This document shows, piece by piece, positions 1 to 40,043 of a DNA stretch of 64,000 nt. Numbering within the stretch: position 1 is the first letter of the stretch; every line of letters starts with the position of its first letter. Below the pieces are notes generated by a model. The model was not told where the DNA came from, did not search any database, and saw only the letters and a program-made list of their open reading frames with translations. A program made the position numbers and the translations under genes. The stretch spans positions 252,013 through 316,012 of the IMG/VR virus record IMGVR_UViG_3300021197_001489; one strand, written 5' to 3'.

Positions 1-2
1 CA

Positions 3-290
3 ATCCCGCTTTTACAGGATCAAAGACTGCTTAACCTAGACTTTAAAATTATTGACTTTTACAAATTAAACAAGTACATTGGCTTTTCTAAAGTAACAGT
101 AGTTACTAACTCAGTTAAGCCAGGGGCCTGGCTATGTAGTAAATCCATCTACGACGACTACATGATGCTTTATCATAGTCAAGAAGAAATGGAAAGAGAA
201 TATCAGGCCTATCGAAGTATCATGATATCACACGACGAGATATCAGTTCCAGAATGGAAATTAATGGTTGACTTTTTGGATAAAAAGTAG
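3..290 (+). CDS. Partial CDS (3' end of a hypothetical protein running in from the left edge)
   Basis: Frame 3 is open from base 3 to TAG at 288-290 (IPLLQDQRLL...VDFLDKK*); not in the ORF track because its start lies outside the window. Confidence 0.6.
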   Translation: MPLLQDQRLLNLDFKIIDFYKLNKYIGFSKVTVVTNSVKPGAWLCSKSIYDDYMMLYHSQEEMEREYQAYRSIMISHDEISVPEWKLMVDFLDKK

Positions 291-16143: not shown

Positions 16144-16476
16144 ATGGGCGAAGAAGAAATTAAACAAGCAGGGTTTCACCCAGCAGACACCAACGGTGAT
16201 GGAAACGTTACCAATGATGAACATGAAATGTACATGGAATTCAAACGTAAAGAACTTGAAGATCAAGATGCAATGCGCGATGCACAGCGTAAGATGGCAT
16301 GGTTTAGTTTAGCAGGTATGCTCCTATATCCAGCTATTGTGCTAATTGCGGTGCTAGCCGGCATTGACCAAGCAGCAAAAATACTAGGCGATATGGCAGC
16401 CGTTTACTTTGTTTCAGTAGCAGCTATTGTTGCAGCATTCTTTGGTGCGCAAGCATATAACAAACCTAAGAAATAG
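16144..16476 (+). CDS. EF-hand-containing two-TM membrane protein
   Basis: Canonical 12-residue loop DTNGDGNVTNDE, two hydrophobic helices, basic C-terminus (NKPKK). Confidence 0.75.
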   Translation: MGEEEIKQAGFHPADTNGDGNVTNDEHEMYMEFKRKELEDQDAMRDAQRKMAWFSLAGMLLYPAIVLIAVLAGIDQAAKILGDMAAVYFVSVAAIVAAFFGAQAYNKPKK

Positions 16477-17030
16477 TGTACCCCCATCCATACTACTGCT
16501 GGCCAGACTATCCTGGCGTTGAAAACTTTTACTTTGTAAACATTCCAAAAAATTGCAGTACCACAGTGCGCAACTGGGCAGCATGGATTGGAACACGTAA
16601 TGGCAAACTAACCAAGCCTTTTCGTTTTACCATTCTGCGTGATCCGTATGGTAGACTCAAGAGTACATTTGCATATGGACTGAGTCAGCGATACAGTTAC
16701 TTGGAAACGGTTGAAAGCATTGGCAACAAACTGTTAGGAGCCAGCGAGCTTTCTGGAGACTTGCTGACACATTTTATACCGCAGCATGTGTTTCTTGAAC
16801 ATGCGCCAGTTAAACCAGAACATTATTATCACAGTGGGCAGATGCGTGAATTGCGTCAAGAACTAAGCAACCGCAGCGGAATCGATCTTATATGGATACA
16901 TGAGAATCGCAGCAGGTACAGTGCTGAGTTCACTGAGCAGTACAACAACTGGTTTGTAAAAAATCAAACCTGGATCGATGATTACCTTGGCCGAGATGTC
17001 GAATTATATGCTCAACACATTGTCTCTTAG
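16476..17030 (+). CDS. Sulfotransferase family protein (Sulfotransfer_2-like)
   Basis: FVNIPKNCSTT (5'-PSB-like), FTILRDPYGRLKS (3'-PB-like), HFIPQ. Confidence 0.75.
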   Translation: MYPHPYYCWPDYPGVENFYFVNIPKNCSTTVRNWAAWIGTRNGKLTKPFRFTILRDPYGRLKSTFAYGLSQRYSYLETVESIGNKLLGASELSGDLLTHFIPQHVFLEHAPVKPEHYYHSGQMRELRQELSNRSGIDLIWIHENRSRYSAEFTEQYNNWFVKNQTWIDDYLGRDVELYAQHIVS

Positions 17031-18062
17031 CTCTTGGGTTATTGAATCAAAAAATTCATCACTAAAAAACAGCGTTTTGTTTTTGCTGGCTATAGTTTTA
17101 CAGCTATTCCAAATTGATTCCTGTTGATTATCAGGTAAGTTATTGATACGATCCATCTCTTTTATGACCATGAGCATGCGCTTGTCGCAGTCTGATTCTG
17201 TATCATAACTTTCGTCAATAAAGGGTGAGAATGTTTCGAATCCGTAACTGCGCAAATATTTCAGTGTTCCAGCACCATTCAGTATCATAAAAGGATGCCC
17301 GCATGCAATTGGGCGTAGTGTTTTTTCTGTAAGGTGGATGCGACCATCGTATACAGTTTCTAACACAATGCTGCAATTTGTTTTTGCAAAGTCTTCGCAG
17401 TTATATTCAGCACTGCTATTGCTGTTAACAACGGCGTCAGGATCAATACTGCCCAGTTGCTTTCTGTCAACAAACCTAAGCAGTTTTAAAAAATGTTGTC
17501 GGTATTGTCTTGTGCCAGTTGTGCCTCTGGCATACACTAACCAATTAGCCTCTTTGTCTTCTTGCGGTAGTTCAAGACGTTGGTCATACTGAGCATATCT
17601 ATACCAGTCTCGAGCAATTGCTGCATGACTCCACCAATAAGCACATGCAAATAGTCCACTGTCTTCATAGCGTTCTACTTGAGGGCTAGCCAGTTCACTG
17701 TGTAATAATATCCATTTTTCTGTGAAGTTTTGTGGGTGCTGCCATCTTAGATTTAGGTTCTCATAGTTAGATTTTTTAATATCATCGATTTGTGTTGGAA
17801 TAAAGTTACCACTAGCTACAAGTGCGTTGAGGATCTTTTGATCATCACTGTACATGTCAAAATCCAATGGCTCTTGATCGTGACAAATTAGCACAGGAAA
17901 AGCAGCGTATTTTTTACGATATATATCTTCGTTCATTCGATCTACATTGCTTACTAGATTGGCAATATCTTTTTGTCCCCAGGGATAGAAGTATTTGATT
18001 AAAAATTTATTTTCTACCACCTGGGCGACAAAATTGTATAAATTACTAGTAGGAACAGACAT
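17004..18062 (-). CDS. Glycosyltransferase-like protein
   Basis: C-terminal IVLET...LTEKTLRPI..GHPF...G.L.YLRSYGFETF...DESYD block resembling GT10-type TEK motifs; start placed at MSVPTS. Confidence 0.55.
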   Translation of the reverse strand: MSVPTSNLYNFVAQVVENKFLIKYFYPWGQKDIANLVSNVDRMNEDIYRKKYAAFPVLICHDQEPLDFDMYSDDQKILNALVASGNFIPTQIDDIKKSNYENLNLRWQHPQNFTEKWILLHSELASPQVERYEDSGLFACAYWWSHAAIARDWYRYAQYDQRLELPQEDKEANWLVYARGTTGTRQYRQHFLKLLRFVDRKQLGSIDPDAVVNSNSSAEYNCEDFAKTNCSIVLETVYDGRIHLTEKTLRPIACGHPFMILNGAGTLKYLRSYGFETFSPFIDESYDTESDCDKRMLMVIKEMDRINNLPDNQQESIWNSCKTIASKNKTLFFSDEFFDSITQELRDNVLSI

Positions 18063-18078
18063 CTTAGAAAGGTACCTT

Positions 18079-19314
18079 ATGAGAATTGGATTTATTGGGC
18101 TTGGCAAGCTCGGACTTGATTGCGCCGAAGTAATGGCAGAAAAGTATACAGTACATGGCTACGATATTTACCCGCGTACTTCGGACAGTGTAAAAGTTTG
18201 TAGCACTCCCAAAAAGATGATTGACAACAGTGATTGGATTTTTATTGCTGTTCAAACGCCACACACAGAAGGTTATGATGGTAGTGTTCCTAGCTCGCAC
18301 ATGGAACCCAAAGACTTTGGACATGATGCTGTTAAAGATGCTATTAACATGGTAAACGAACTGGCTATCGAACCAAAAAAGATTGTGCTTATTTCAACAG
18401 TGCTTCCTGGAACTACACGACGTGAGTTTTATCCCTTGCTAAACAGTGAGCATCAATTTTTATACAATCCATACTTGATTGCAATGGGCAGTGTAAAGTG
18501 GGACTTTGCTAACCCTGAAATGGTTATGATAGGTACCGAAACAGGTGATCCTACAGAGATGGAAGATCTAATCAATCTGTATCGCCCACTGATGAAAAAC
18601 AATCCACGTTATGTTACAGGTACCTGGGACGAATGCGAAAGTATAAAGATATTTTACAACACATTTATCAGTGCTAAAGTAGGGCTTGTAAACATGATAC
18701 AAGACTTTGCACTAAAGATAGGCAACATAAACGTTGACGTTGTTACAGACGCTCTAGCACAGAGTACAATGCGTATTATGGGTCCGAAGTACATGACAGC
18801 AGGCATGGGAGACTCAGGCGCATGCCATCCACGAGATAACATTGCACTGCGTTGGCTTGCAAAAGAATACGATATCGGTTACGATATGTTTGATACTATT
18901 ATGGGTGCTAGAGAAGTACAAGCAAAGAATCTAGCAGACTTTTTGGTAGAACACGCCGACGGCAAGCCTATTGTGATACACGGGAAAGCATACAAACCTG
19001 ATGTGCCTTTTTGTATCGGAAGTTATAGCACACTGATTGGTTTCTACATTGAAGAGCAAGGATTGCCGGTAAAGTATGTAGATCCAATTGCAGACAATCC
19101 AAAAGACGTAGTTGATAGCATTGACGAAGCATCAATGATATTGTATGCACACAATAGATATATCACATACGGTTATACTGGACAGTATACCAAGGATGAT
19201 ACTTTCTACTGTGACATTCCACCAGGTTCTGTTGTTGTTGATCCATGGAGAAACCTGCCTAAACACAGTAACAGTTACGAAGTAATACATTATGGCAACA
19301 CCAGACCACAATAA
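18079..19314 (+). CDS. UDP-glucose/GDP-mannose dehydrogenase family protein (divergent)
   Basis: GFIGLGKLG Rossmann motif, IAVQTP, STVLPGTT, ESIKIFYNTF, catalytic Cys in GACHPRD, GKAYKPD. Confidence 0.9.
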   Translation: MRIGFIGLGKLGLDCAEVMAEKYTVHGYDIYPRTSDSVKVCSTPKKMIDNSDWIFIAVQTPHTEGYDGSVPSSHMEPKDFGHDAVKDAINMVNELAIEPKKIVLISTVLPGTTRREFYPLLNSEHQFLYNPYLIAMGSVKWDFANPEMVMIGTETGDPTEMEDLINLYRPLMKNNPRYVTGTWDECESIKIFYNTFISAKVGLVNMIQDFALKIGNINVDVVTDALAQSTMRIMGPKYMTAGMGDSGACHPRDNIALRWLAKEYDIGYDMFDTIMGAREVQAKNLADFLVEHADGKPIVIHGKAYKPDVPFCIGSYSTLIGFYIEEQGLPVKYVDPIADNPKDVVDSIDEASMILYAHNRYITYGYTGQYTKDDTFYCDIPPGSVVVDPWRNLPKHSNSYEVIHYGNTRPQ

Positions 19315-22542: not shown

Positions 22543-23565
22543 ATGGCTGCTCGCGTAGGCTTTTGCTGCAAGTATCTGCATCCAGATCAGACACAAAAGA
22601 AAAAAGTCCTAATGGAGATCCAGCAACAGCGTACAGAAAAATGTACCACTGTTGCGTGGCTTAAACGGCAGACTCGTGAAGTTGCTGAACAGCGTTTGTA
22701 TGACATCATGCAACACAACATGCAAAGCGCGGCCAACTTGGTTGAGTATGTAGGACGCCTTGAGCCAGGATTGCGAATGGTGCGACTGGGCAGCAATCAA
22801 TTGCCCATGTACACACAGCCAGACTTCAGTTACTTTTGGCAACAACCTGATATCAAAGTTGAATTGGCAAAAGGTTACGCACAAGTAGGCAAACTTGCAC
22901 GACAGTGGGATGTGCGCCTAAGTTTTCACCCTGGACAGTTTTGCGTATTAGCCAGTGACAGTGAAGATATCGTAAATAGAAGCATAGAGGAGTTTGAATA
23001 TCATGTTGACATGGTCAGATGGATGGGCTTCGGCCGTAAATTCCAAGACTTCAAGTGTAATGTCCACATCAGCGGTCGCCAGGGTCCAGCCGGTATCCAA
23101 CGAGTCCTCCCAAGACTATCTCCAGAAGCGCGAAACTGCATTACTATTGAGAATGACGAGATGTCGCACGGTCTCGACGCATCGCTTGAGCTCAGCAAAG
23201 ACGTCGCCCTCGTTCTTGATATACACCACCACTGGGTCCGTACCGGTGAATACATCGAGGCCACCGACGATAGAGTTCTTCGCGTAATTGATAGCTGGCG
23301 CGGTATACGCCCAGCATTGCATTACTCAGTATCACGTGAAGACATACTGGTTGATCACGATCCTAATGTGCGTCCAGATATGGAAAGTTTACTCGCAGCA
23401 GGCTTCAAGAAACAAAAACTTAGAGCGCACAGTGACTTCTACTGGAATCATGCAGTCAACGAATGGGCTGCAACATTTGCCAAAGATTTTGACATACAAT
23501 GTGAGAGCAAGTGCAAGAATCTTGCCAGTCATGCATTCCACAATAACTATATTAAAGGAGACTAA
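22543..23565 (+). CDS. uvsE: UV damage endonuclease
   Basis: RVGFCC, VRLGS, RLSFHPGQF, NVHISG, ITIENDE, LVLDIHHHW, HYSVS, AHSDF, ESKCKNLA. Confidence 0.93.
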   Translation: MAARVGFCCKYLHPDQTQKKKVLMEIQQQRTEKCTTVAWLKRQTREVAEQRLYDIMQHNMQSAANLVEYVGRLEPGLRMVRLGSNQLPMYTQPDFSYFWQQPDIKVELAKGYAQVGKLARQWDVRLSFHPGQFCVLASDSEDIVNRSIEEFEYHVDMVRWMGFGRKFQDFKCNVHISGRQGPAGIQRVLPRLSPEARNCITIENDEMSHGLDASLELSKDVALVLDIHHHWVRTGEYIEATDDRVLRVIDSWRGIRPALHYSVSREDILVDHDPNVRPDMESLLAAGFKKQKLRAHSDFYWNHAVNEWAATFAKDFDIQCESKCKNLASHAFHNNYIKGD

Positions 23566-31831: not shown

Positions 31832-32038
31832 ATGGGAATGAGCTCATATGTTATGGATTGCGAAGAACAATTTATTGAAGCAGTAAGTGTTCGAATTGGG
31901 GACTGCGAACAGATTGAAGAACTTTATGAAGCACTAGTTAAAGATCGCTGCTTTCTTTATCTTAAGCATATGTGCGGTGCCGAACGCCAAGAATTAATTA
32001 GTGAACTTTGGGAAGAGTTTTGGTCTCGCTATGTCTAA
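31832..32038 (+). CDS. Small acidic early protein
   Basis: Directly after the promoter and RBS. Confidence 0.8.
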   Translation: MGMSSYVMDCEEQFIEAVSVRIGDCEQIEELYEALVKDRCFLYLKHMCGAERQELISELWEEFWSRYV

Positions 32039-32204
32039 GCACACCAAATATAAACATCCAGGAGGAGATAGTCCAGTGCAGTATGAAGCAAATTCACCAT
32101 TGATGCAGGAAATGAAAAAACCGCCATTAAAATTTGTCAAAAATCAAAGTTATGGACTGAAAGCAATTAAGCGTAACACGCAGATTAGAAATCAATCACG
32201 CTAA
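32031..32204 (+). CDS. Small basic hypothetical protein
   Basis: Overlaps upstream stop; 57 aa. Confidence 0.6.
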   Translation: MSKHTKYKHPGGDSPVQYEANSPLMQEMKKPPLKFVKNQSYGLKAIKRNTQIRNQSR

Positions 32205-32939
32205 GTTAAACACTGTGTCTGGGTTGCTGTTTGCTAGTATTTCTCTAGTACGTTCTGTTTTAAGTCCAGTCATCTGTAGCACTGCTCTTGGATGACTGCT
32301 TGCATTTGCTGTACAGTGTGGCACATTACTCCAATCAAACACATGCACTTCGCCCGCACGCCATTTATCATATATGCAATTGCCATACATATAAAAATGT
32401 CCTGGCTTCCAATCATCTAGCATAATAGTGATACGCACTATACGCTCTGGGTCTTCTGGACAACGATCCCACAGTTTGTCAATGTGCATGTTAAACATCT
32501 GACCAGTCATCTGTATGTGTGCTTGCCACTTGACTAAACTAACACCATCACTGGTTAGCTGAAAGTAGTCCATCATTTTGTAAAGAGTTGGATAGTCTGA
32601 CCAGTCTGCAAAACTATTTTTATTGGTAAGCATTATGCCTTTTGGATCACCGCCTGCTTGTGCAATGTCGTACTCTTCTTGGGACAGCATGTCAGGATCT
32701 TTTTGCTTTTGAGCAAAATGTTTGCGAGTTGCCCAGTTTACAGGATGTGTTGCTTGTACAAGTCTATCACGTTCCTCACGCCAGTCTCCTTCAAATCTGC
32801 CAATTACGTTAAACCAATCGCCTGGACGATCCTCTACAGTGTCATCAAAATGATATTCACTGTGCCTAACAGTCCAATCCCAGCTGCTAGGATATAAATC
32901 TGGATTGTCTAGTTTTGTATTTTTATTCCAGTCTCTCAT
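32196..32939 (-). CDS. 2OG-Fe(II)/cupin-fold oxygenase-like protein
   Basis: FNMHID (HxD), LDDWKPGH, WRAGE, PHCTAN, PRAVLQMTG. Confidence 0.7.
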   Translation of the reverse strand: MRDWNKNTKLDNPDLYPSSWDWTVRHSEYHFDDTVEDRPGDWFNVIGRFEGDWREERDRLVQATHPVNWATRKHFAQKQKDPDMLSQEEYDIAQAGGDPKGIMLTNKNSFADWSDYPTLYKMMDYFQLTSDGVSLVKWQAHIQMTGQMFNMHIDKLWDRCPEDPERIVRITIMLDDWKPGHFYMYGNCIYDKWRAGEVHVFDWSNVPHCTANASSHPRAVLQMTGLKTERTREILANSNPDTVFNLA

Positions 32940-33313
32940 TATATGTCTCCTGCTGCTCGCAATACGTCTCGCATGTCTGTTGCACTGATATTGTGTACTG
33001 TTTCTCCTAAGTTGTGTTTGGTAAAACTATAGCCAACATCACGTCCGTAACTGATATCAACGATGTTAGGTGCTTTCCATACAATATAATGTTCAGTGTA
33101 ATTGTATCCTGCTGCTTGCAAACCGTCTCTTATGCCGTGCCATACCTGCTCGTAATCAAATGGATTATCATTATCAATAGGCATTTCTCGGACCATTATT
33201 AGTACCTGTCCAGTTTTTTCTAATGCCTTAGCAAACAGTGCGGTGTGTCCATCATGCCATGGTTGAAACCTGCCAAGCATCTGTGTTGTGGGTTTGTTCC
33301 AATCAAACATCAC
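32939..33313 (-). CDS. HIGH-superfamily nucleotidyltransferase (cytidylyltransferase/ATP-sulfurylase-like)
   Basis: GRFQPWHDGH and C-terminal NISATDMR. Confidence 0.8.
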   Translation of the reverse strand: MMFDWNKPTTQMLGRFQPWHDGHTALFAKALEKTGQVLIMVREMPIDNDNPFDYEQVWHGIRDGLQAAGYNYTEHYIVWKAPNIVDISYGRDVGYSFTKHNLGETVHNISATDMRDVLRAAGDI

Positions 33314-33498
33314 ATTGACTCAATGTGCTTGATTGTATCGATGCGTATAGTAACTTGCCTGTGCAAATCATCTACAATTGCGTGAACGTCTTTATCTTTA
33401 CCGGGGCCTGCTTTAATTAATGCAGACTTTTGCTCAGTAATAAGTGCTAGTATTTCTTTTCTAAGTGCTTCAATTGCAACCTCTTGCCACATTTCCAT
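33310..33498 (-). CDS. Small helical protein
   Basis: 62 aa, coupled on both sides. Confidence 0.7.
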   Translation of the reverse strand: MEMWQEVAIEALRKEILALITEQKSALIKAGPGKDKDVHAIVDDLHRQVTIRIDTIKHIESM

Positions 33499-33941
33499 TA
33501 TAGTCTCTCCGTAGGTTTGTTTTGTTGTTTAAGCATGTAATTGGTGACAACCTTTGAAAGTTCTGTGTGCGTATCTTTAAACCAGGATGATACGTGATAG
33601 TCGTAATAGTCTGGTTTTACAAATATGACATTTGTATCTTCGTATTGACTTTTTTTGATAGTATCCATCCACACTGTATAGTCAGCGTTAAACCAATCCC
33701 TAGCGAGCTGTGTGGGACAAACAAAATCTGCAACTGCAATTTTTCCTGCCATTACTACGCCATCTGCTAGATGACACATTCGCAAAGTTTGACGTAATCT
33801 TCCTTTTATACTGAAGTCCCAGTCATCGTATTGTGTTCGAACAGTATCTGCATTAAGCCATACGCCGCCTATCAGCTCGGCAAAAGGCTTAGCCAGTGTG
33901 CTTTTGCCGCTGCCCGGTAATCCACATATCAATATTTTCAT
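33498..33941 (-). CDS. Adenylylsulfate (APS) kinase-like P-loop kinase
   Basis: ILICGLPGSGKSTLA, LNADTVR, FS..GR.RQ, VADFVCP. Confidence 0.8.
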   Translation of the reverse strand: MKILICGLPGSGKSTLAKPFAELIGGVWLNADTVRTQYDDWDFSIKGRLRQTLRMCHLADGVVMAGKIAVADFVCPTQLARDWFNADYTVWMDTIKKSQYEDTNVIFVKPDYYDYHVSSWFKDTHTELSKVVTNYMLKQQNKPTERL

Positions 33942-33959
33942 ATTCAGGCATATCCTTTG

Positions 33960-34637
33960 TTAGAATTTAGTATCTTTTTCAACATGCGGCTTACTTCCAT
34001 CAATCATTGTACCTATGTCGTTTCTACGTCTGTCAAGCCAACTGTTTTCTACATAGTGTACATACTTTGCATTTGGATCTTTGTTTAGTATGTAATGCAG
34101 TTTTTCATTGCTGTAGTCAACTGGAATATCAAGTACACTATCTAAACTTTTTACATATTGATGTCTAAACATGTAAAGCAATTCAACACTTAGAAAAGTG
34201 TGCTTGTATTCCATTAAGTCATCAATCTTATTTAAGTAGTTGTGTAAACTTTCTACACCTCTTTTACGCAGTTGATTTTGTGCAGTAATGTTTTGGTCTC
34301 TGCCAATAATACCAACTTGTAAGTTGCCTTTTTCATTTAACCTGCGCAATACTTCTGCATAGTCAGGATACTTTGTTTGCCTTACGCCATTACTATGATC
34401 TTTATCAACATAAGGACCACTAACACTTAGCACATAGTTTTCATGCTCTGTCCAGTCATAGGCGTCAATGTGTTCAGGCGTGTTCCAAATATCTTTGTAT
34501 GGAGCATTATCATGGTTTACCCAGTACTCACGCAACAGTTGATCCCAGCCATGCACATTGCTGTGCATGGATAAGACTTTGCTGAACACATGGTTACCAG
34601 TGCCTTGTGGGCCACTTATAACTAGTATGTTTGCCAT
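33960..34637 (-). CDS. Sulfotransferase-like P-loop protein
   Basis: ILVISGPQGTGNHVFSKVL N-terminal loop, IIGRD motif. Confidence 0.5.
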   Translation of the reverse strand: MANILVISGPQGTGNHVFSKVLSMHSNVHGWDQLLREYWVNHDNAPYKDIWNTPEHIDAYDWTEHENYVLSVSGPYVDKDHSNGVRQTKYPDYAEVLRRLNEKGNLQVGIIGRDQNITAQNQLRKRGVESLHNYLNKIDDLMEYKHTFLSVELLYMFRHQYVKSLDSVLDIPVDYSNEKLHYILNKDPNAKYVHYVENSWLDRRRNDIGTMIDGSKPHVEKDTKF

Positions 34638-35695
34638 TATTTTACCAACTCTGGCTTGAAGATTGATTTAAGACCAAATGCTTCTGTGTTGAACTTTACC
34701 AGTGTTTGCAGTGCATCAGCAGTTACAAACTTCATCAGTGTGTTTACTTGTGCATTGCCTGCATCACCTAGCATCCACTCATAGTTGCCAACTTTCTTTT
34801 GAATCTTCTTGATTGACTCAGGATTGGTTGACACCTTTTCAAGTGCTGCCACAAGTTTTGCTCTATTAGGATTGCCTTTGTTTACCCACAATGCTTTTTG
34901 TAATCCATCTCGGAAACTTTTTACCAGCTTGTATGCATCTGCTAGATCGCCTTTTGGGTCTGCTTTGTACAGGGCAGAAAATTGTGTTTCCATTTGAATG
35001 CCTGGATAGTTTGGATCATCTGCGTGGGTACCGTCTGGCTGTAGAATGCCATGATGGAACCATAAACGTGCTTCACCTTTGTCAATTACTGGCTGTACAT
35101 GCTTTTTGAATGAAGCAGGATTTTCACGAGTGCCATTGAGTTCGCCACGCTTGAATGCAAGACGTCTTTCGTTGCCCTTCATTCCTTTAATCCAGTTTAC
35201 CTTTTCGTTGAAGCAACCAACGTATGCTTCTGTGCTAGGTAAATTACCACACTTTAGCAGTGTCATTGCGATACCTTCAGGAACTTTACCGCCGCCTCCT
35301 GAGAAACTTGTTCTGTCAGCATTGGGATTATGATCGCCATGTACTGCTGTAATAATGTTAAGGTTCATTAGTCCAACTGAATCATAGTCAGCATAGTTGT
35401 AATCCACTGCTTCTTGTAAGAAACTTACACCGTTGCCGCCGTTGGATACCATAATAGTTTTGTCATCAAAACGCAGTTCATTGTGGAACTTGTTAAAGCC
35501 TGGAATATCCCTTGCACCACGGATGTGCTTGAGAATAATTTTTTCATCCAAGTATTTTTCCATCTCAGTGGCCACAATCTGTGCCCACTGACTTGTACCG
35601 CCGCCTGGCTTCTGTGGTACAATCATTGTGTAATCAGCAACTGCTGATGTTGTAAAACCTAGCATCAGTGCTAGTGATAATAAAAGTTTACGCAT
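34637..35695 (-). CDS. tctC: Tripartite tricarboxylate transporter substrate-binding protein (TctC/Bug-like)
   Basis: Signal peptide, MIVPQKPGGGTSQWAQ, adjacent to tctA. Confidence 0.8.
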   Translation of the reverse strand: MRKLLLSLALMLGFTTSAVADYTMIVPQKPGGGTSQWAQIVATEMEKYLDEKIILKHIRGARDIPGFNKFHNELRFDDKTIMVSNGGNGVSFLQEAVDYNYADYDSVGLMNLNIITAVHGDHNPNADRTSFSGGGGKVPEGIAMTLLKCGNLPSTEAYVGCFNEKVNWIKGMKGNERRLAFKRGELNGTRENPASFKKHVQPVIDKGEARLWFHHGILQPDGTHADDPNYPGIQMETQFSALYKADPKGDLADAYKLVKSFRDGLQKALWVNKGNPNRAKLVAALEKVSTNPESIKKIQKKVGNYEWMLGDAGNAQVNTLMKFVTADALQTLVKFNTEAFGLKSIFKPELVK

Positions 35696-37127
35696 AATCT
35701 ATTCTTCCTTTTCTCATAATGCTGTATACAAATATTCCAATAATACACACAATTAGTGACATGAATATTGGACGTGTGATTAATGTTTCCACAGTGTAAA
35801 GTCCTGTGATCTGAAATGTTAATCCTTCAACTTTTTCTGCCAGTATGTAACCGATTAACATAGCAGGTCTGCTAAACTTGTAGTGTCGCATTGTAAATCC
35901 TATTACAGAAAATACTGCTAACATTGCAAGGTCTTCCCAACCGCCTGTGTACTGCATTGAAGTAAAAATAATCAATCCTAGTAGCACAGGAAAATAATAT
36001 TTGTATGGAACTGCGGCCAGTTTACTAATTGGCTTGATTAAAACCATACAAATCAGTGCAACTACAACTGTGGCACCTAAAAAGCCAAATGTCATACTTG
36101 CAAATAATTCTGTGTCTTCTGCAATATCTGGCGTGCCCAGTTCGATGCCCAAGTACATAAACAGGCTCATCAATATAGCTGCAAACTTTGCACCTGGTAT
36201 GCCAAATATAACTGTGGTAATCATTGATGTTGCCTTTTGTGCATTGTTAGCACCCTCAGGTCCTATCACACCCTTGATGTTGCCATTGCCAAACTTTTCT
36301 TTGGGATTACTGGCAACTGCTTGTCCATACGCCATCCAGTCTGCCATTTGCCCACCTAGTCCAGGCAACAAGCCAATGAACGCACCTATAAAGCCACCGC
36401 GCAAAGCAAGCCATCTGTTCTCCCAACTTGCTTTCATGCCTGCCCATAGCTCACCATCGCGTATTTCACTGTCAGCAGTGCTGTGCTTTAAAAACAGCCC
36501 TCGTGTTAGTTCAGGAACAGCAAACAGTCCTGCGGCAACTGCCATTATCTGTATACCATCTTCTAAGTAGAACCAATATTGTGCGCCGAATCTGGCTGCA
36601 TTATTATCTGGGTTGACACCTACCATGCCTACAAAGATTCCAAAAGCAATAGCAAGGATGGTGCGGAACCAAAACTGGTTGGTTAAAAATCCCACAGTGA
36701 CAAATGCCATTAAAACAAAAGCCCACAGTTCAGGCACACCCAGTATATAGATTAAATTGGTATACCATGGCAACAATAAAAATACCAAACACCCCCAAAG
36801 CAAACCGTTTACAGTTGATGTTGTTACTGCGGCACTGATAGCATAGCCTGCTCTGCCACGTTGGGCTAGTGGAAAGCCATCAACCATGGTAGCGGCTGCA
36901 CTGTTAGCACCGGGTATGCCTAGCAGTATTGCAGTGAAACTGTCACCTGTTGTGCTTGCAGCAACTACTGCCATAAGGAATATTACTCCCATATATGGCT
37001 CGTGTGCAAAGTAGCTAATAAATCCAAACAGTGCAACCAAACCTGTTGTTGCCCCTGCACTGGGAATAATGCCTATAATTAGGCCATAAAATACTCCGCC
37101 GAGCAGATATGTAATCATCTCGATCAT
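35688..37127 (-). CDS. tctA: Tripartite tricarboxylate transporter permease TctA
   Basis: GIPGANSAAATMVDGFPLAQRGRAG, GLLPGLG, GPEGANNA, GIPG, FSRPAMLIG; about 12 TM segments. Confidence 0.93.
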   Translation of the reverse strand: MIEMITYLLGGVFYGLIIGIIPSAGATTGLVALFGFISYFAHEPYMGVIFLMAVVAASTTGDSFTAILLGIPGANSAAATMVDGFPLAQRGRAGYAISAAVTTSTVNGLLWGCLVFLLLPWYTNLIYILGVPELWAFVLMAFVTVGFLTNQFWFRTILAIAFGIFVGMVGVNPDNNAARFGAQYWFYLEDGIQIMAVAAGLFAVPELTRGLFLKHSTADSEIRDGELWAGMKASWENRWLALRGGFIGAFIGLLPGLGGQMADWMAYGQAVASNPKEKFGNGNIKGVIGPEGANNAQKATSMITTVIFGIPGAKFAAILMSLFMYLGIELGTPDIAEDTELFASMTFGFLGATVVVALICMVLIKPISKLAAVPYKYYFPVLLGLIIFTSMQYTGGWEDLAMLAVFSVIGFTMRHYKFSRPAMLIGYILAEKVEGLTFQITGLYTVETLITRPIFMSLIVCIIGIFVYSIMRKGRIDYA

Positions 37128-37174
37128 ACCGAATCCACCGCCAAAAAGCAGTGCCTTTAAAAAGTTAGGGGGTA

Positions 37175-37213
37175 TTACAAGCGAACTCTTTTACATTCAG
37201 GCGTTGCTTGTAA
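37175..37213 (-). promoter_or_regulatory. Intergenic hairpin ahead of tctA
   Basis: TTACAAGC/GCTTGTAA 8-bp stem extended by AAC/GTT in the only ~95-nt gap of the operon. Confidence 0.45.
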
Positions 37214-37223
37214 GTGTATGCTT

Positions 37224-37904
37224 TTACTTAGTACGCCAAACAAAGTACAGTCGATTTTTATGACTGTCAGTTCTAATATCCAGTATGTCGACGCCAAGTT
37301 GATCGGCACAGTTTACAATAAAGTTAGCGTCCCAAGGATAAAAACTAATCCATGTTGACTCATCTCTATCATGTGGCAAACCTGGATTAGCACGGAAAAA
37401 TATTACTGCGCCTGGATTGCATAAACTTACTGCATGTTCAAGTTCAGCAAATATTTTTGAAGTTGATCCAAAGTTGATTGAACCCAATGCCATCATTGCG
37501 TCATACTTTTCACCTGGATGGTAGTCTAACAACTTAACACAAATATCAGCTGAATCGTTATATGGATCAATGCCAATGAGATTGTGTATTTTTCCTTTAA
37601 ACTCGTGATATCCGCAACCAATGTCTAGCACCTTACGTGGCCTTAGTTGGTTTACTTCGTCAATCAATGCAGGTCCTGAATATTTAAATCTTTTAATATG
37701 TCCTTGCCATACATTGCGAAAGTAATTGTCCAAGACTAGATCATCAATCTTGTCTACTAATTCACCAATGTTGGTATAACTTACGTCTTCAACGTCTACA
37801 TTGAATGTACCACGAATTGCTTGCCGTAGCGTTTCTGGCTTGCGCAGTAGCTTGGGTGAAACATGTATCATGTTTTCCAGTTTATTGAGTATTTTGTGAT
37901 TCAT
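37224..37904 (-). CDS. Class I SAM-dependent methyltransferase
   Basis: VLDIGCG, IGIDP, YDAMMALGS. Confidence 0.85.
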   Translation of the reverse strand: MNHKILNKLENMIHVSPKLLRKPETLRQAIRGTFNVDVEDVSYTNIGELVDKIDDLVLDNYFRNVWQGHIKRFKYSGPALIDEVNQLRPRKVLDIGCGYHEFKGKIHNLIGIDPYNDSADICVKLLDYHPGEKYDAMMALGSINFGSTSKIFAELEHAVSLCNPGAVIFFRANPGLPHDRDESTWISFYPWDANFIVNCADQLGVDILDIRTDSHKNRLYFVWRTK

Positions 37905-38769
37905 TTTTTAGTTTCCATTGTTTGTAAAAATAGTCTGCATATATTTTGTTTGCTGCTTGGTTATGATGATAACCGTCACGATTGCAGTAGAGATCTTTGT
38001 AAAGCTCGTATTCGTGTAAAAAATTACCTGGCATATCTGGATGAGGCTCCACGCCTTTGATAAATTCTGCATATGTTGGACAACCTTCGAATCGCAGATT
38101 ATTGTAAGAACTTTCTACGGTGTACTTCAATCTATTCTGATCAACAACGGCTACGTGGTCTGCATAATACTGTGGAGGATATGGCAGTTTATATATTCCC
38201 AATTTATTCAAGTCTTTTCTCCAGTTTGTCAACGCTTCGCCTGATTGTGCTTCATATGCATCTGTTAAACGGTGTGTTGCAAAATATAGAATCTTTTGAT
38301 TATCTTCTACAGGGTATTGAATAAAATCTTCGCCGTGCAATTTACGATGAAGAAAAACTGACATACGTTCTGCGGTAAACACAGTATACATAACAAAAGT
38401 ATTTTTTACATCAAATAAAGTACAAGCTCTTTCTGCTACCAGCTTTATGGTATCATTGGCGGCGCTATTCATACCCAGATTAATTGTGGGAATATCAAAA
38501 TGTTCTGCCAATTGGCTACACCAACTGTGTTCTATCGGCCCGCCAACGTTGACAACAACACTATCTCCTATGCAGATGTTTACAGGCTTGCCAAGAAATT
38601 GTGTATATTCTGGTCCTCTAAAACCCCAACTGTTAAACTGATATTCAAAGTCAGGATACGCATGCCACTCTTCTCTTGTGCGGTTGCACCCATCTGGGTT
38701 ATCCATACTAAATGTTTTAGCTGTAAGGTTGGCCTTACCAACAAAATATTGAAAATCATCAATCAACAT
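37882..38769 (-). CDS. SGNH-like protein
   Basis: FNSWGFRG, CIGDS, INLG, C-terminal DGYHHN. Confidence 0.6.
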   Translation of the reverse strand: MLIDDFQYFVGKANLTAKTFSMDNPDGCNRTREEWHAYPDFEYQFNSWGFRGPEYTQFLGKPVNICIGDSVVVNVGGPIEHSWCSQLAEHFDIPTINLGMNSAANDTIKLVAERACTLFDVKNTFVMYTVFTAERMSVFLHRKLHGEDFIQYPVEDNQKILYFATHRLTDAYEAQSGEALTNWRKDLNKLGIYKLPYPPQYYADHVAVVDQNRLKYTVESSYNNLRFEGCPTYAEFIKGVEPHPDMPGNFLHEYELYKDLYCNRDGYHHNQAANKIYADYFYKQWKLKNESQNTQ

Positions 38770-39337
38770 CAGGTCTGTGTGTTCCTACAAAAATATCATT
38801 ATGCTTGTGATGTTGTTTCCATTGTACACTATTCTTCTGTGCAAAGTCAAGTATCAATTTGTTCTGTTCTTGAATACGGTAAGACATTAAATAATCACTT
38901 TCGTACCAGTCATAGTTTGGATATGTAATATCAAAACCGCCTGCTTGCTTCCACCAAAGGAAACTTGGCCAGTCTGGTCTGTAAATCAATTGTATCCAAG
39001 CAAGTGGATAGGCATCTTGTATTTGTTCAAAGTAGTAGGGCCACTCATGACTCATTAACAGTTTGCATCCACTATTTTCAGTGTAGGGAGCATCTAAGTT
39101 GCTGCGATTTAGACTGCAATCAAACTCCATGCCGGTGCCATAATATGCTTCAGTGTGTCCTATTTTGGAATGGTGTTGGTATGCGCGATGTGCTGCACGG
39201 TCAGTGCAGTTGTAGTTGTTAGAGCTTTTGATTTCTTTAGCAATACCACTCCAGCGACTGCCCGGCACGCCTGTAAAAAAGATGTACTCCGGTAATGTCA
39301 TTTTGGTATAAGTATCCTGTCTATATTTCGAGGACAA
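38759..39337 (-). CDS. Sulfotransferase-like P-loop protein
   Basis: IFFTGVPGSRWSG N-terminal loop, KSH-like MSHEW, LIYRP. Confidence 0.5.
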   Translation of the reverse strand: MSSKYRQDTYTKMTLPEYIFFTGVPGSRWSGIAKEIKSSNNYNCTDRAAHRAYQHHSKIGHTEAYYGTGMEFDCSLNRSNLDAPYTENSGCKLLMSHEWPYYFEQIQDAYPLAWIQLIYRPDWPSFLWWKQAGGFDITYPNYDWYESDYLMSYRIQEQNKLILDFAQKNSVQWKQHHKHNDIFVGTHRPDVD

Positions 39338-39930
39338 ACTGCAACCACTTTGTAATTGTATTCAGTTTCTAATAGTGTAATCGCAATGTCTTGATTGCGA
39401 AAACCAGGTTGTGCTTCGCATACTATTAATGGTTTATACGTTCGAATAGTTTTATCTGCACCTTTGATTATGTCGTATTCGAATCCATCAGTATCTATTT
39501 TAATATAATCTACATCATTGATATTAAAATCATCCAATGGGTATGTTTTTTCATTATAATCTGGATTACCGAAGAAGCTGTCGGTTCGTGGGTATTCACA
39601 TATGGTATTGCCCACACAACATCTAAAGTAAGTTACCTTGTCTTTTCTGATATTACGTGGAAATAGTTTACGAACCCTAGGATCAAATCCATACACATGC
39701 CCAAAGTGTTCTTGCAAATACCGTGTGTATTCTCCGTCTCTACAACCAATATCTACTGCATTTCTAAAATGTTTTATATAAGGTTGACTCAATAACCATG
39801 TTAGTTTGCAGTGGTGATTGGGAAACTCCTGTATACCATCTGGGCTATGAAAGAAGTCTCTTGCATACCATTCGCTTTCAAAAATGTAAGACTCTGGCAT
39901 AAATGTAGTAGGCTCAATTGGATAGTGCAT
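39298..39930 (-). CDS. FkbM-family methyltransferase
   Basis: AVDIGCRDG, YGFDP, YIKIDTDGFEYDIIKGA, KPLIVCE. Confidence 0.88.
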   Translation of the reverse strand: MHYPIEPTTFMPESYIFESEWYARDFFHSPDGIQEFPNHHCKLTWLLSQPYIKHFRNAVDIGCRDGEYTRYLQEHFGHVYGFDPRVRKLFPRNIRKDKVTYFRCCVGNTICEYPRTDSFFGNPDYNEKTYPLDDFNINDVDYIKIDTDGFEYDIIKGADKTIRTYKPLIVCEAQPGFRNQDIAITLLETEYNYKVVAVCPRNIDRILIPK

Positions 39931-39991
39931 GATATTATTAATTATCTATGCATTTTTCAGCGGAAAAATAAAGCCAAATGGCATTATTCGG

Positions 39992-40043
39992 TTGACCATT
40001 AGGATATATGTGTTATACTGTATGTACAGTTAGAAACAAGGAG
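39992..40043 (+). promoter_or_regulatory. Early promoter-RBS cassette copy 2
   Basis: TTGACC-N16-TATACT; identical 33-mer at 40011-40043. Confidence 0.88.

What the first reader, a model, noticed from the sequence alone, without database searches (positions are those of the whole stretch)
32939..34637. Possible minimal phage PAPS (activated sulfate) pathway feeding several sulfotransferases
Seen: a 124-aa HIGH nucleotidyltransferase (RFQPWHDGH ... NISATDMR), an APS-kinase-like protein and an adjacent sulfotransferase-like ORF; two more sulfotransferase-type ORFs at 16476 and 38759. Known: Sat-type ATP sulfurylase has the HIGH fold (QxRNPxHxxH, ISGT) and with APS kinase makes PAPS, the sulfotransferase donor. 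Inference: the usual 'cytidylyltransferase' label may hide a stripped-down ATP sulfurylase, giving the phage its own sulfation system.
Basis: partly seen in the sequence, partly recalled or inferred. Interest (0 to 1): 0.68.

Follow-up and report, generated by a model that had tools for sequence, protein, structure and literature searches.

The report
Phage kinase–nucleotidyltransferase pair, candidate PAPS maker
A 316-kb marine phage carries a tightly linked APS-kinase-like gene and a tiny nucleotidyltransferase gene next to sulfotransferase-like genes; the same pair is common in SAR11 bacteria and marine phages and is a plausible, still unproven, new way to make the sulfate donor PAPS.

Summary
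The 124-aa protein is a HIGH-motif nucleotidyltransferase (NT). The 147-aa protein is a short member of the APS-kinase family. The 225-aa neighbour has a sulfotransferase-type fold, and ORF 16476 carries Sulfotransfer_2 motifs. ORF 38759 could not be confirmed as a sulfotransferase.

By sequence and fold, the NT's closest relatives are NadM-type NMN adenylyltransferases, not Sat. It fails Sat's Pfam cut-off.

Comparative data still tie the NT to APS-kinase chemistry and to sulfation:
- The kinase lies within 700 bp of the NT in 77 of 86 viral loci and is adjacent or fused in most of 80 bacterial loci.
- One variant fuses the NT to a full canonical CysC.
- None of 18 carrier genomes has Sat, and 14 of them also lack CysD.
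- Two bacterial fusions sit 1–3 kb from Sulfotransfer_3 genes.
- In Pelagibacteraceae, Sulfotransfer_1 genes go with the pair (7/8 against 3/16).

Against the idea:
- SAR11 has AprA, an alternative APS source, and some carriers also have a separate CysC.
- Many phage copies lie among replication genes.
- Phage Sano has no sulfotransferase hit.

Verdict: a real, widespread, uncharacterised module. A minimal PAPS synthase is the best reading, at about 0.45. Biochemistry is needed.

The parts
32939..33313 (-). 124-aa HIGH-motif nucleotidyltransferase (NT). Family motifs are GRxQPWHxGH, NP, PNI, YGRDVGY and ISATxIR.
   Evidence: Pfam CTP_transf_like, 22.4 bits. NCBIfam best hits are NMNAT models, all far below their cut-offs. 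A family profile hits archaeal NMNAT 1f9a at E 1.2e-7. AF2 model pLDDT 81, with residues 87-100 disordered. Fold hits are NadM, PPAT, NMNAT and, at Z 6.8, ATP sulfurylase. The family has 2181 relatives.
33310..33498 (-). 62-aa ORF between the kinase and the NT, function unknown. Its ends overlap both neighbours.
   Evidence: No family hit. Only one homologue among 86 viral loci, in L103. In 22 of 86 viral loci a different ORF of about 70 aa with hydrophobic stretches sits immediately upstream of the NT.
33498..33941 (-). 147-aa short kinase of the APS-kinase family.
   Evidence: Pfam APS_kinase E 4.6e-7, N-terminal 90 model positions only. A family profile hits solved APS kinases at 2.4e-11 and weaker; in that alignment the kinase has Arg, Phe, Arg and F-V-C-P where the APS kinase has Arg, Phe, Arg and F-V-S-P, and N-A-D where it has D-G-D. 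phrog_10255 is a kinase-NT fusion family.
33960..34637 (-). 225-aa protein with a sulfotransferase-type fold and an invariant GPQG(T/S)GNH loop. It is a candidate acceptor-modifying transferase.
   Evidence: No sequence-family hit. In the VIA-align search the four best matches are all sulfotransferases, Z 9.4-9.6. The language-model search also points to sulfotransferase clusters. Homologues occur in 3 of 85 other viral loci that carry the pair.
16476..17030 (+). 184-aa ORF with Sulfotransfer_2-type 5'-PSB and 3'-PB motifs.
   Evidence: Translation. PF03567 hit at E 0.026, below the cut-off.
1..290 (+). 3' part of a second Sulfotransfer_2-like ORF (182 aa). It starts 258 bases before the window.
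   Evidence: PF03567 E 7.2e-5, 20.4 bits against a cut-off of 22. The translation shows RCGHTS and VRNPYDRLLSA.
34637..35695 (-). 352-aa protein with an N-terminal hydrophobic stretch that looks like a signal peptide (read from the sequence, not run through a predictor). Possibly a TctC/Bug-like binding protein. Context gene in the same tightly packed gene run.
   Evidence: Only a faint PDB hit to BugD, E 0.17. No Pfam hit.
35688..37127 (-). TctA-family transporter membrane subunit. Context gene in the same gene run.
   Evidence: Pfam TctA E 2.7e-91. The 7 matches among 50,697 phage records include a Salmonella genome contig and unannotated fragments, and none is an annotated phage genome.
37224..39930 (-).
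   Evidence: The 192-aa ORF is unconfirmed as a sulfotransferase.
32196..32939 (-). 247-aa ORF directly downstream of the NT, function unknown.
   Evidence: No hits in Pfam, NCBIfam, PHROGs, PDB or the phage records. Not similar to the HalD-like gene that follows the NT in SAR11.

Best explanation
The kinase (33498-33941) and the NT (32939-33313) form one conserved two-step module. The module makes a 3'-phosphorylated, nucleotide-activated small anion, most likely PAPS.

Proposed steps:
1. The NT transfers AMP from ATP to sulfate and so makes APS. This step is inferred.
2. The APS-kinase-family enzyme phosphorylates the 3'-OH of APS to give PAPS. The family assignment is shown; the substrate is inferred.
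3. The phage's sulfotransferase-fold proteins (33960-34637, 16476-17030, and the ORF at the window's start) use PAPS to sulfate a glycan or another acceptor. These genes lie in a glycan-modification island that also holds methyltransferases, a UDP-glucose dehydrogenase and a TctA transporter.

Tight coupling or fusion of the two enzymes would fit the unfavourable equilibrium of the sulfurylase step.
For: **The two genes work as one unit.**
- phrog_10255 is a fusion of kinase and NT. It occurs in Xylella phage Sano, Stenotrophomonas phage DLP_6 and others.
- The kinase lies within 700 bp of the NT in 77 of 86 viral loci.
- A kinase is found in 66 of 80 bacterial loci, mostly directly upstream or fused. 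It is fused in all 12 non-SAR11 Alphaproteobacteria.
- Many representatives of about 260 aa are fusions.

**The kinase belongs to the APS-kinase family.**

**A reverse-order fusion exists.** P0445 joins the NT to a complete canonical CysC domain (PF01583 E 5.7e-63, all 152 model positions). It was found on 4 contigs from different samples. This is the architecture of Sat-CysC enzymes, with the NT in Sat's place.

**Carrier genomes lack the known sulfurylases.**
- The phage has no Sat or CysD-like gene.
- None of 18 carrier genomes has Sat, and 14 of them also lack CysD.
- In the Sphingomicrobium MAG, the fusion is the only APS-kinase-family gene found. It lies 1 kb from a TPR-Sulfotransfer_3 gene (E 8e-46).
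- A second fusion lies 3 kb from a Sulfotransfer_3 gene.

**Sulfotransferases occur with the pair.**
- In Pelagibacteraceae, Sulfotransfer_1 is present at E<=1e-10 in 7 of 8 carriers against 3 of 16 non-carriers (Fisher p 0.0023). Two of those three non-carriers instead have open reading frames of about 615 aa that end in a full APS-kinase domain, a length that suggests CysN-CysC fusions.
- Four of 6 phage records with the pair have Sulfotransfer_2-like hits, and two of these pass the cut-off.
- In the window itself the pair directly follows a sulfotransferase-fold gene.

**ATP sulfurylase is a structural neighbour of the NT.** 1v47 scores Z 6.8 and gives the longest alignment, 105 residues. 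Eight of 28 family members give weak PF01747 hits.
Against: - The NT's nearest relatives are NMNATs.
- It fails the PF01747 cut-off. In an alignment made from memory of the Sat motif QxRNPxHxxH, the NT has Phe or Trp where Sat has the Arg.
- It is very small, and its model shows only three strands, with the conserved YGRDVGY loop disordered.
- SAR11 carriers have AprA (7 of 8). AprA could supply APS from sulfite without any sulfurylase.
- Two SAR11 isolates also carry a separate canonical CysC, so the pair's kinase would be redundant there if it only makes PAPS.
- About 20 viral loci place the pair among replication genes.
- Phage Sano and a 342-kb phage record show no sulfotransferase hit.
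- In SAR11 isolate HIMB1495 the pair sits among genes whose Pfam families suggest methylamine and one-carbon metabolism, not glycan genes.
- Ten of the 12 non-SAR11 fusions have no sulfotransferase within 5 kb.
- The SAR11 association is not corrected for phylogeny.
- No activity was measured.
Confidence: 0.45

Rival explanations
1. Only the kinase belongs to sulfur activation. It turns APS made by the host (through AprBA, CysDN or Sat) into PAPS for the phage's sulfotransferases. The NT carries out another adenylyl or cytidylyl transfer that is merely co-regulated or acts on a different substrate.
For: The kinase's family assignment is solid. SAR11 has AprA, an APS source. The NT looks like an NMNAT, not like Sat.
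Against: Fusion in both domain orders and near-universal adjacency across phages and two bacterial groups argue for one pathway. In the Sphingomicrobium and Acetobacteraceae genomes none of Sat, CysD or a true AprA was found.
Confidence: 0.2
2. The module makes a PAPS-like donor that carries a group other than sulfate. It would be a 3'-phospho-nucleoside 5'-diphospho-X, analogous to the 3'-phospho-CDP-amidate made with the APS-kinase homologue Cj1415 in Campylobacter. The sulfotransferase-fold proteins would then transfer that group.
For: The Campylobacter enzymes Cj1415-Cj1418 together make CDP-phosphoramidate 3'-phosphate (PMC11800397, read). That Cj1415 is an APS-kinase homologue and performs the 3'-phosphorylation comes from my own knowledge and the title of that paper's reference 14. 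The 225-aa protein's PSB-like loop has Gln where sulfotransferases have the catalytic Lys or Arg. Methyltransferases flank the locus, as they do in the methyl-phosphoramidate cluster.
Against: No counterparts of the glutamine kinase or the amidohydrolase of that pathway were seen. That pathway's transferase, Cj1416, is not of the HIGH type as far as I recall (from memory). ORF 16476 and the bacterial neighbours are ordinary PAPS-type sulfotransferases.
Confidence: 0.15
3. The module is a NadR-like NAD salvage pair. The kinase phosphorylates nicotinamide riboside and the NT, acting as an NMNAT, makes NAD, for example to counter NAD-depleting host defences.
For: The NT's best sequence and fold matches are NadM and NadR NMNATs. 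JGI names some members NMNAT. Many phage copies lie among replication genes.
Against: The kinase matches APS kinases through their substrate-binding segment at E about 1e-11, while the NadR-type kinase family AAA_28 scores only 1.4e-3. The NT-canonical CysC fusion makes no sense for NAD synthesis. The NT lacks about 45 residues relative to the 168-residue M. jannaschii NMNAT, and after its position 79 only the ISAT helix realigns.
Confidence: 0.08
4. The module carries out the last two steps of CoA synthesis, PPAT followed by dephospho-CoA kinase. That route also pairs a HIGH-type transferase with a 3'-kinase.
For: PPAT structures top the Foldseek list. The chemical logic is the same: adenylyl transfer followed by 3'-phosphorylation.
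Against: Identity to PPAT is only 13-19% over 78 residues. The kinase's match to dephospho-CoA kinase is negligible, E 0.098. The canonical CysC fusion argues against it.
Confidence: 0.03

Closest known systems
Bifunctional PAPS synthases (Sat-CysC of bacteria such as Aquifex; APS kinase-ATP sulfurylase PAPSS of animals)
   Same: A nucleotidyltransferase of the HIGH superfamily is coupled or fused to an APS-kinase-family domain. Both domain orders occur. The module is associated with sulfotransferases.
   Different: The transferase has 124 aa instead of about 350-400. It has no PUA-like domain, fails PF01747, and is closer to NMNAT. The usual partner kinase is a shortened form that matches only the first 90 of 152 model positions.
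NadM-type and archaeal NMN adenylyltransferases (PDB 1f9a, 1ej2, 2qjt)
   Same: It shares the GRFQPFHxGH-type motif and the first strand-helix-strand-helix-strand unit, with 28-31% identity over 80 residues, and the ISxT-type helix.
   Different: It lacks about 45 residues relative to the 168-residue 1f9a, and the segment after position 79 does not align apart from the ISAT helix. It has its own invariant YGRDVGY and PNI motifs. Its scores are far below the NMNAT family cut-offs. Its obligatory partner is an APS-kinase-like protein.
Cj1415 cytidine diphosphoramidate kinase pathway of Campylobacter jejuni
   Same: An APS-kinase homologue 3'-phosphorylates a nucleoside diphospho-compound that serves as a group donor for capsule modification. 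Methyltransferases lie nearby (PMC11800397; own knowledge).
   Different: That pathway needs four enzymes, and its transferase is not of the HIGH type as far as I recall (from memory). None of the other three enzymes was seen here.
NadR (NMNAT plus ribosylnicotinamide kinase)
   Same: A HIGH-type transferase is fused to a P-loop kinase. NadR appears among the fold neighbours at Z 6.3-6.4.
   Different: The kinase family differs: APS_kinase at 4.6e-7 against AAA_28 at 1.4e-3. The usual domain order is reversed.

Membership tests
HIGH-signature nucleotidyltransferases (Pfam CTP_transf_like, PF01467) | HxGH motif at the end of the first strand | tested here: met
   The sequence has H20-D-G-H23, which is invariant or nearly so in 37 and in 28 aligned relatives. 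Pfam score 22.4 bits against a cut-off of 21.
HIGH-signature nucleotidyltransferases (Pfam CTP_transf_like, PF01467) | C-terminal ISxT-type motif at a helix start | tested here: met
   I-S-A-T-x-x-R at residues 109-115 is conserved across the family. It aligns with SGTEIR of NMNAT.
HIGH-signature nucleotidyltransferases (Pfam CTP_transf_like, PF01467) | Five-stranded parallel Rossmann-like sheet | tested here: inconclusive
   The AF2 model shows three strands. Residues 87-100 have pLDDT below 50.
Sat-type ATP sulfurylase (PF01747) | Family profile score above the curated cut-off | tested here: not met
   11.5 bits against 24.3, E 0.19, covering residues 17-40 only. Eight of 28 relatives give weak hits, the best at E 1.3e-3. 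No Sat appears among the profile's PDB hits at E<=1.
Sat-type ATP sulfurylase (PF01747) | QxRNPxHxxH with the sulfate-binding Arg, and the GRDHAG loop | tested here: inconclusive
   The Q-P-x-H-x-x-H part is present, but it is the same in NMNATs. The position of Sat's Arg holds Phe or Trp. An invariant Y-G-R-D-V-G-Y could correspond to the GRD loop, but it is disordered in the model. The Sat motifs are quoted from memory.
Sat-type ATP sulfurylase (PF01747) | Fold similarity to solved ATP sulfurylases | tested here: met
   1v47 at Z 6.8 with 105 residues aligned; 1x6v at 6.1; 4maf at 5.8; 1r6x at 5.7. These lie within about 1.5-2.6 Z of the best hit, NadM at 8.3. This shows the shared superfamily fold, not the function.
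Sat-type ATP sulfurylase (PF01747) | Sulfate-dependent ATP-PPi chemistry (APS formation) | not testable with these tools
   This needs an enzyme assay.
NadM / archaeal NMNAT | Family cut-offs and coverage of the full length, including the second half of the enzyme | tested here: not met
   25-28 bits against cut-offs of 127-397. Only residues 11-79 align. The protein has 124 aa against 168 for 1f9a.
APS kinase (PF01583 / CysC) | P-loop and a profile score above the cut-off | tested here: met
   GLPGSGKST is present. 30.4 bits against 21.1. The family profile hits 2yvu at 2.4e-11 and more than 20 other APS kinases.
APS kinase (PF01583 / CysC) | Substrate-site residues (D-G-D, Arg, Phe, Arg, Asn, I-S-P) | tested here: inconclusive
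   In the HMM alignment to 2yvu, the Arg, Phe and Arg positions and F-V-C-P (against F-V-S-P) match, but D-G-D is N-A-D. The roles of these residues are quoted from memory of published APS kinase structures.
APS kinase (PF01583 / CysC) | Full-length match, including the C-terminal lid region, and the equivalog score | tested here: not met
   Only model positions 5-90 of 152 match. TIGR00455 scores 24 bits against 138.7.
PAPS-dependent sulfotransferases (225-aa ORF) | Sulfotransferase fold | tested here: met
   The four top-ranked matches among 48,161 chains are sulfotransferases, Z 9.4-9.6 with 159-163 residues aligned. P-loop kinases and GTPases follow at Z up to 8.8. The model's pLDDT is only 71.
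PAPS-dependent sulfotransferases (225-aa ORF) | 5'-PSB loop with a catalytic Lys or Arg, and a family profile hit | tested here: not met
   The loop is G-P-Q-G-T-G-N-H, with Gln at the Lys/Arg position. No Sulfotransfer family hit was found in 20 members.
Sulfotransfer_2 (PF03567), ORF 16476-17030 | 5'-PSB (PKxxSTT) and 3'-PB (RDPxxRxxS) motifs | tested here: met
   IPKNCSTT and RDPYGRLKS are in the translation.
Sulfotransfer_2 (PF03567), ORF 16476-17030 | Profile score above the cut-off | tested here: not met
   11.9 bits against 22, E 0.026.

The most novel reading that the evidence does not exclude
The 124-aa NT family would be a third, minimal class of sulfate adenylyltransferase, alongside Sat and CysDN.

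Together with its short APS-kinase partner it would form a PAPS synthase of about 270 aa. The pair is present in about 70% of the Pelagibacteraceae genomes sampled, in other Alphaproteobacteria that lack assimilatory sulfate reduction, and in at least 593 viral contigs.

SAR11 is regarded as unable to activate sulfate. On this reading it would sulfate its surface using seawater sulfate, and its phages would carry their own copy. The same enzyme, running in reverse, could be the Sat partner that these AprBA-bearing genomes lack.
Probability: 0.35. Interest if true: 0.85.

Novelty: new variant of a known kind. Interest (0 to 1): 0.65.

Why it matters
**If the reading is correct.** It adds a new, very small enzyme class for the first step of sulfate activation. 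It also places that class in the most abundant bacteria of the ocean and in their viruses. This bears on two things:
- how SAR11, which has neither Sat nor CysDN, supplies its sulfotransferases and handles the APS made by AprBA;
- why large marine phages carry sulfation genes, for which plausible reasons are modification of the cell surface or of the virion.

**If it is wrong.** The module is still a very common two-gene unit of unknown chemistry. It was found in 107 of 151 sampled Pelagibacteraceae genomes and in at least 593 viral contigs. Databases currently label its parts 'kinase', 'adenylylsulfate kinase', 'NMNAT' or 'hypothetical'.

**Testability.** A direct test is cheap: two small soluble proteins and a 35S-sulfate assay.

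Tried and rejected
- **Nucleotide search.** Megablast of window 32000-40000 against 50,697 phage records found nothing.
- **Protein searches against phage records.** The 225-aa and 247-aa ORFs gave no match by tblastn.
- **225-aa ORF by sequence.**
  - Pfam, NCBIfam and PHROGs gave no usable family hit; the only one, NCBIfam HAD_type_II at E 0.037, is far below its cut-off.
  - A family profile against PDB gave nothing credible.
  - A Pfam scan of 20 members gave only weak HAD_2 noise.
  - Foldseek gave no hit at E<=0.001. Only the exhaustive aligner ranked sulfotransferases first.
- **192-aa ORF (38759).** It shows no similarity to the 225-aa family or to ORF 16476, so I do not count it as a sulfotransferase.
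- **A conserved oxygenase next to the NT.** The 247-aa ORF is not similar to the HalD-like gene that follows the NT in SAR11. I dropped this idea.
- **Conserved neighbours.** No neighbour family is shared by more than 22 of 86 viral loci, and none is shared among the 12 non-SAR11 bacterial loci.
- **Binding of kinase and NT.** The complex prediction returned 'no answer' (score 0.01). This is no evidence either way.
- **Scan with the broad alignment.** The search for related loci with alignment A4 failed because it had no conserved stretch. I repeated the scan with A5.
- **Paper on Cj1415.** PMC5938747 is not held.
- **Literature.** Searches on phages or SAR11 together with APS kinase found nothing on this pair.
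- **Tools and codes not used.** I used no sequencing-read tools and no alternative genetic code.


Full report
**Setting**

The window is bases 252013-316012 of a 316-kb IMG/VR virus record that CheckV estimates as 91% complete. It encodes a phage-type DNA ligase and a tail-fibre-like protein.

The finding lies in a tightly packed run of minus-strand genes from 39930 down to 32196, with overlapping stops and starts. In order, the run holds:
- an FkbM methyltransferase;
- a 192-aa ORF of unknown function;
- an ORF with weak SGNH-like matches;
- a methyltransferase-like ORF;
- a TctA transporter subunit (Pfam E 2.7e-91);
- a 352-aa protein with an N-terminal hydrophobic stretch that looks like a signal peptide;
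- the 225-aa ORF;
- the 147-aa kinase;
- a 62-aa ORF;
- the 124-aa NT;
- a 247-aa ORF of unknown function.

**Checking the observation**

*NT.* The NT carries the quoted motifs and just passes Pfam CTP_transf_like (22.4 bits against a cut-off of 21).

*Kinase.* The kinase passes Pfam APS_kinase (30.4 bits against 21.1), but only through model position 90 of 152. A profile of its relatives hits more than twenty solved APS kinases, from 2yvu at E 2.4e-11 downwards. The alignments run through the segment that binds the substrate. There the Arg, Phe, Arg and F-V-(C/S)-P positions match, while D-G-D reads N-A-D.

*225-aa ORF.* This ORF has no sequence-family match. Its AlphaFold model (pLDDT 71) ranks four sulfotransferases first among 48,161 chains, at Z 9.4-9.6 with about 160 residues aligned. 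P-loop kinases and GTPases follow closely. Its invariant loop G-P-Q-G-T/S-G-N-H has Gln where sulfotransferases have Lys or Arg.

*Other sulfotransferase candidates.*
- ORF 16476-17030 shows clear Sulfotransfer_2 motifs but scores below the cut-off.
- A second ORF of this kind straddles the window's left edge.
- ORF 38759 could not be tied to any sulfotransferase.

**What the NT resembles**

By sequence it is nearest to NadM-type and archaeal NMNATs:
- NCBIfam hits at E about 1e-6, all far below their cut-offs;
- a family profile against PDB 1f9a at E 1.2e-7, over residues 11-79 only.

The AlphaFold model has pLDDT 81. It shows three strands plus the ISAT helix, and the conserved YGRDVGY loop is disordered.
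- Foldseek gives PPAT, NadM, HldC and NadR, with no ATP sulfurylase in the top 50.
- The exhaustive aligner gives NadM at Z 8.3 and 7.7, M. jannaschii NMNAT at 7.4, CCT at 6.8 and T. thermophilus ATP sulfurylase at 6.8. The sulfurylase alignment is the longest, at 105 residues. PPAT follows at 6.6 and human PAPSS1 at 6.1.

A per-member Pfam scan of 28 diverse relatives gave CTP_transf_like in 27, FAD_syn in 12 and ATP-sulfurylase in 8. The best ATP-sulfurylase E-value was 1.3e-3, and the window's NT scored 0.19.

So the protein belongs to the HIGH superfamily and is closest to NMNAT. It is not a member of the Sat family as that family is defined. It lacks about 45 residues relative to the 168-residue M. 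jannaschii NMNAT (1f9a), and beyond position 79 only the ISAT helix realigns. It also has family-specific invariant residues: Arg42, Asn50, Pro82-Asn83, and Tyr89-Gly-Arg91-x-Val-Gly-Tyr95.

**The pair is one unit**

- PHROG family 10255 ('kinase', 230 aa) matches the kinase with its first half and the NT with its second half.
- Such fusions occur in Xylella phages Sano and Salvo, in Stenotrophomonas phages including the 168-kb DLP_6, and in others.
- The exhaustive protein search found 2181 NT relatives. Many of them are fusions of about 260 aa.
- In 86 viral loci, the kinase lies within 700 bp of the NT in 77.
- In 80 bacterial loci, a kinase is present in 66, mostly directly upstream or fused. 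It is fused in all 12 non-SAR11 Alphaproteobacteria.
- P0445 (311 aa, on four contigs from different samples) has the reverse order. Here the NT is followed by a complete canonical CysC, with PF01583 at E 5.7e-63 over all 152 model positions and the classic motifs visible in the sequence.

**Distribution**

The pair is not mainly a phage invention. A scan of one genome per species gave at least 493 hits. Most are in Pelagibacteraceae, including the isolates HIMB1495 and HIMB1587. There are also 12 Alphaproteobacteria outside SAR11, mostly metagenome-assembled genomes.

Among 151 Pelagibacteraceae genomes at least 85% complete, 107 have the NT. IMG/VR holds at least 593 viral contigs with it. 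The window's NT is 55-72% identical to the viral copies and 43-47% identical to the SAR11 copies.

**Links to sulfur activation and sulfation**

1. The phage has no Sat and no convincing CysD or CysH.
2. Among 18 carrier genomes, none has Sat and only 4 have CysD. The same 4 are the only ones with strong PAPS_reduct hits.
3. In the Sphingomicrobium MAG, the fusion is the only APS-kinase-family gene found. It lies 1 kb from a TPR-Sulfotransfer_3 gene (E 8e-46). In the Rhodospirillaceae genome a Sulfotransfer_3 gene lies 3 kb away. That makes 2 sulfotransferases among 97 neighbouring genes.
4. All 8 SAR11 carriers tested have Sulfotransfer_1 genes, 7 of them at E<=1e-10.
   - Of 16 non-carriers in the same family, 3 do.
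   - Two of those three have open reading frames of about 615 aa ending in a full APS-kinase domain. The length suggests CysN-CysC fusions, but I did not test for a CysN domain.
   - Fisher p is 0.0023. It is not corrected for phylogeny.
5. Of 6 phage records with the pair, 4 have Sulfotransfer_2-like hits, and 2 of these pass the cut-off (DLP_6 and a 155-kb contig). Sano and a 342-kb record have none.

**Points against the sulfurylase reading**

- SAR11 carriers have a true AprA (7 of 8; E about 1e-298). APS can therefore arise from sulfite without a sulfurylase.
- HIMB1495 and HIMB1587 also hold a separate canonical CysC.
- In HIMB1495 the pair sits among a Rieske oxygenase, a homocysteine S-methyltransferase-family gene, two FAD oxidoreductase plus aminomethyltransferase fusions, a creatinase/prolidase-family peptidase, an enoyl-CoA hydratase and a HalD-like oxygenase. 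I read these as methylamine and one-carbon metabolism genes, not glycan genes.
- In about 20 viral loci the neighbours are DnaB-like, RecA-like, primase and clamp-loader genes. Epimerase and CMP-sugar synthetase neighbours occur in about 15 loci each.
- No neighbour family is universal.

**Interpretation**

*What is shown:* the gene pair is real, conserved and functionally coupled. The kinase belongs to the APS-kinase family. The NT belongs to the HIGH superfamily.

*What is inferred:*
- The NT makes the kinase's substrate.
- That substrate is most simply APS, because the only partner of known specificity is a canonical CysC, because carrier genomes lack the known sulfurylases, and because sulfotransferases occur in the same genomes or nearby.

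I put this reading at about 0.45. The rivals are:
- only the kinase acts on host APS (0.2);
- the module makes a PAPS-like donor with another group, as in the Cj1415 pathway (0.15; PMC11800397);
- the module is a NadR-like NAD salvage pair (0.08);
- the module carries out CoA-type chemistry (0.03).

**Novelty**

I found no paper describing this pair. Database names are 'kinase', 'adenylylsulfate kinase', 'NMNAT' or 'hypothetical'. I rate it a new variant of a known kind, a PAPS-synthase-like module with an unprecedented small transferase, pending biochemistry.

**Limits**

- Many of the bacterial genomes are MAGs or single-cell assemblies, so an absence in them is not proof.
- The roles I give to individual APS kinase, Sat and NMNAT residues, and the Sat motifs, are quoted from memory of the literature. 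They were not tested here.
- The complex prediction gave no verdict.

Noticed in passing
window 34637-37127 (-): The phage encodes a TctA-family transporter subunit (E 2.7e-91) followed by a 352-aa protein that has an N-terminal hydrophobic stretch and a faint BugD/TctC-like hit. The 7 TctA matches among 50,697 phage records include a Salmonella genome contig and unannotated fragments, and none is an annotated phage genome. The two genes share the tightly packed gene run with the sulfation-type genes, so the transporter might import the acceptor or the anion. That is pure speculation.
   Followed up: partly
G000:C1:251754-252302 = window 1-290 plus 258 bases upstream (+); L009:1372-1920: A second Sulfotransfer_2-like ORF (182 aa; RCGHTS, VRNPYDRLLSA). 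PF03567 scores 20.4 bits, just under the cut-off of 22.
   Followed up: partly
Pelagibacteraceae genomes G001, G002, G013, G014, G016, G017, G018: These SAR11 genomes have a full AprA (E about 1e-298) but no Sat-type ATP sulfurylase and no CysD. The enzyme that would normally turn APS into sulfate plus ATP appears to be missing. The NT is a candidate for that role too.
   Followed up: partly
22 of 86 viral loci, e.g. L144:4219-4437, L112:9799-10008: An ORF of about 70 aa with two hydrophobic stretches sits immediately upstream of the NT in these loci, which would place it between the kinase and the NT. The window has an unrelated 62-aa ORF in the slot between kinase and NT.
   Followed up: partly
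proteins P0371, P0390, P0404 (representative library): NT domains appear joined to partial chorismate synthase, to the C-terminal domain of 3-dehydroquinate synthase, or to a ubiquitin-hydrolase fragment. These may be chimeric gene calls or misassemblies. Two of the three partners are shikimate-pathway enzymes, which is odd.
   Followed up: no
protein P0456 (395 aa): A membrane domain, DUF4118, precedes a kinase-NT fusion in what looks like a high-GC bacterial protein. This suggests a membrane-anchored form of the module.
   Followed up: no
L032:10388-11239 and 22 other SAR11 loci: A 283-aa HalD/WelO5-like 2OG-Fe(II) oxygenase or halogenase-type gene directly follows the NT in 23 SAR11 loci. 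An enoyl-CoA hydratase-sized gene follows in 48.
   Followed up: partly
viral loci, cluster represented by L174:3829-4701: A 290-aa protein family without a Pfam match occurs in 29 copies across 9 pair-bearing viral loci, so it is multi-copy within each locus.
   Followed up: no
window 17995-19314, 15549-16142, 22543-23565, 337-1728 (+): Other auxiliary genes in the window: a UDP-glucose/GDP-mannose dehydrogenase, a further methyltransferase, a UvdE UV endonuclease and an ATP-dependent DNA ligase.
   Followed up: no
KU682439.2:38391-38822 (Stenotrophomonas phage DLP_6): This cultured phage carries both the kinase-NT fusion (AAY80_227, annotated hypothetical) and a Sulfotransfer_2 gene above the Pfam cut-off (E 8.8e-10). 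It would be a convenient laboratory system for testing the pathway.
   Followed up: partly
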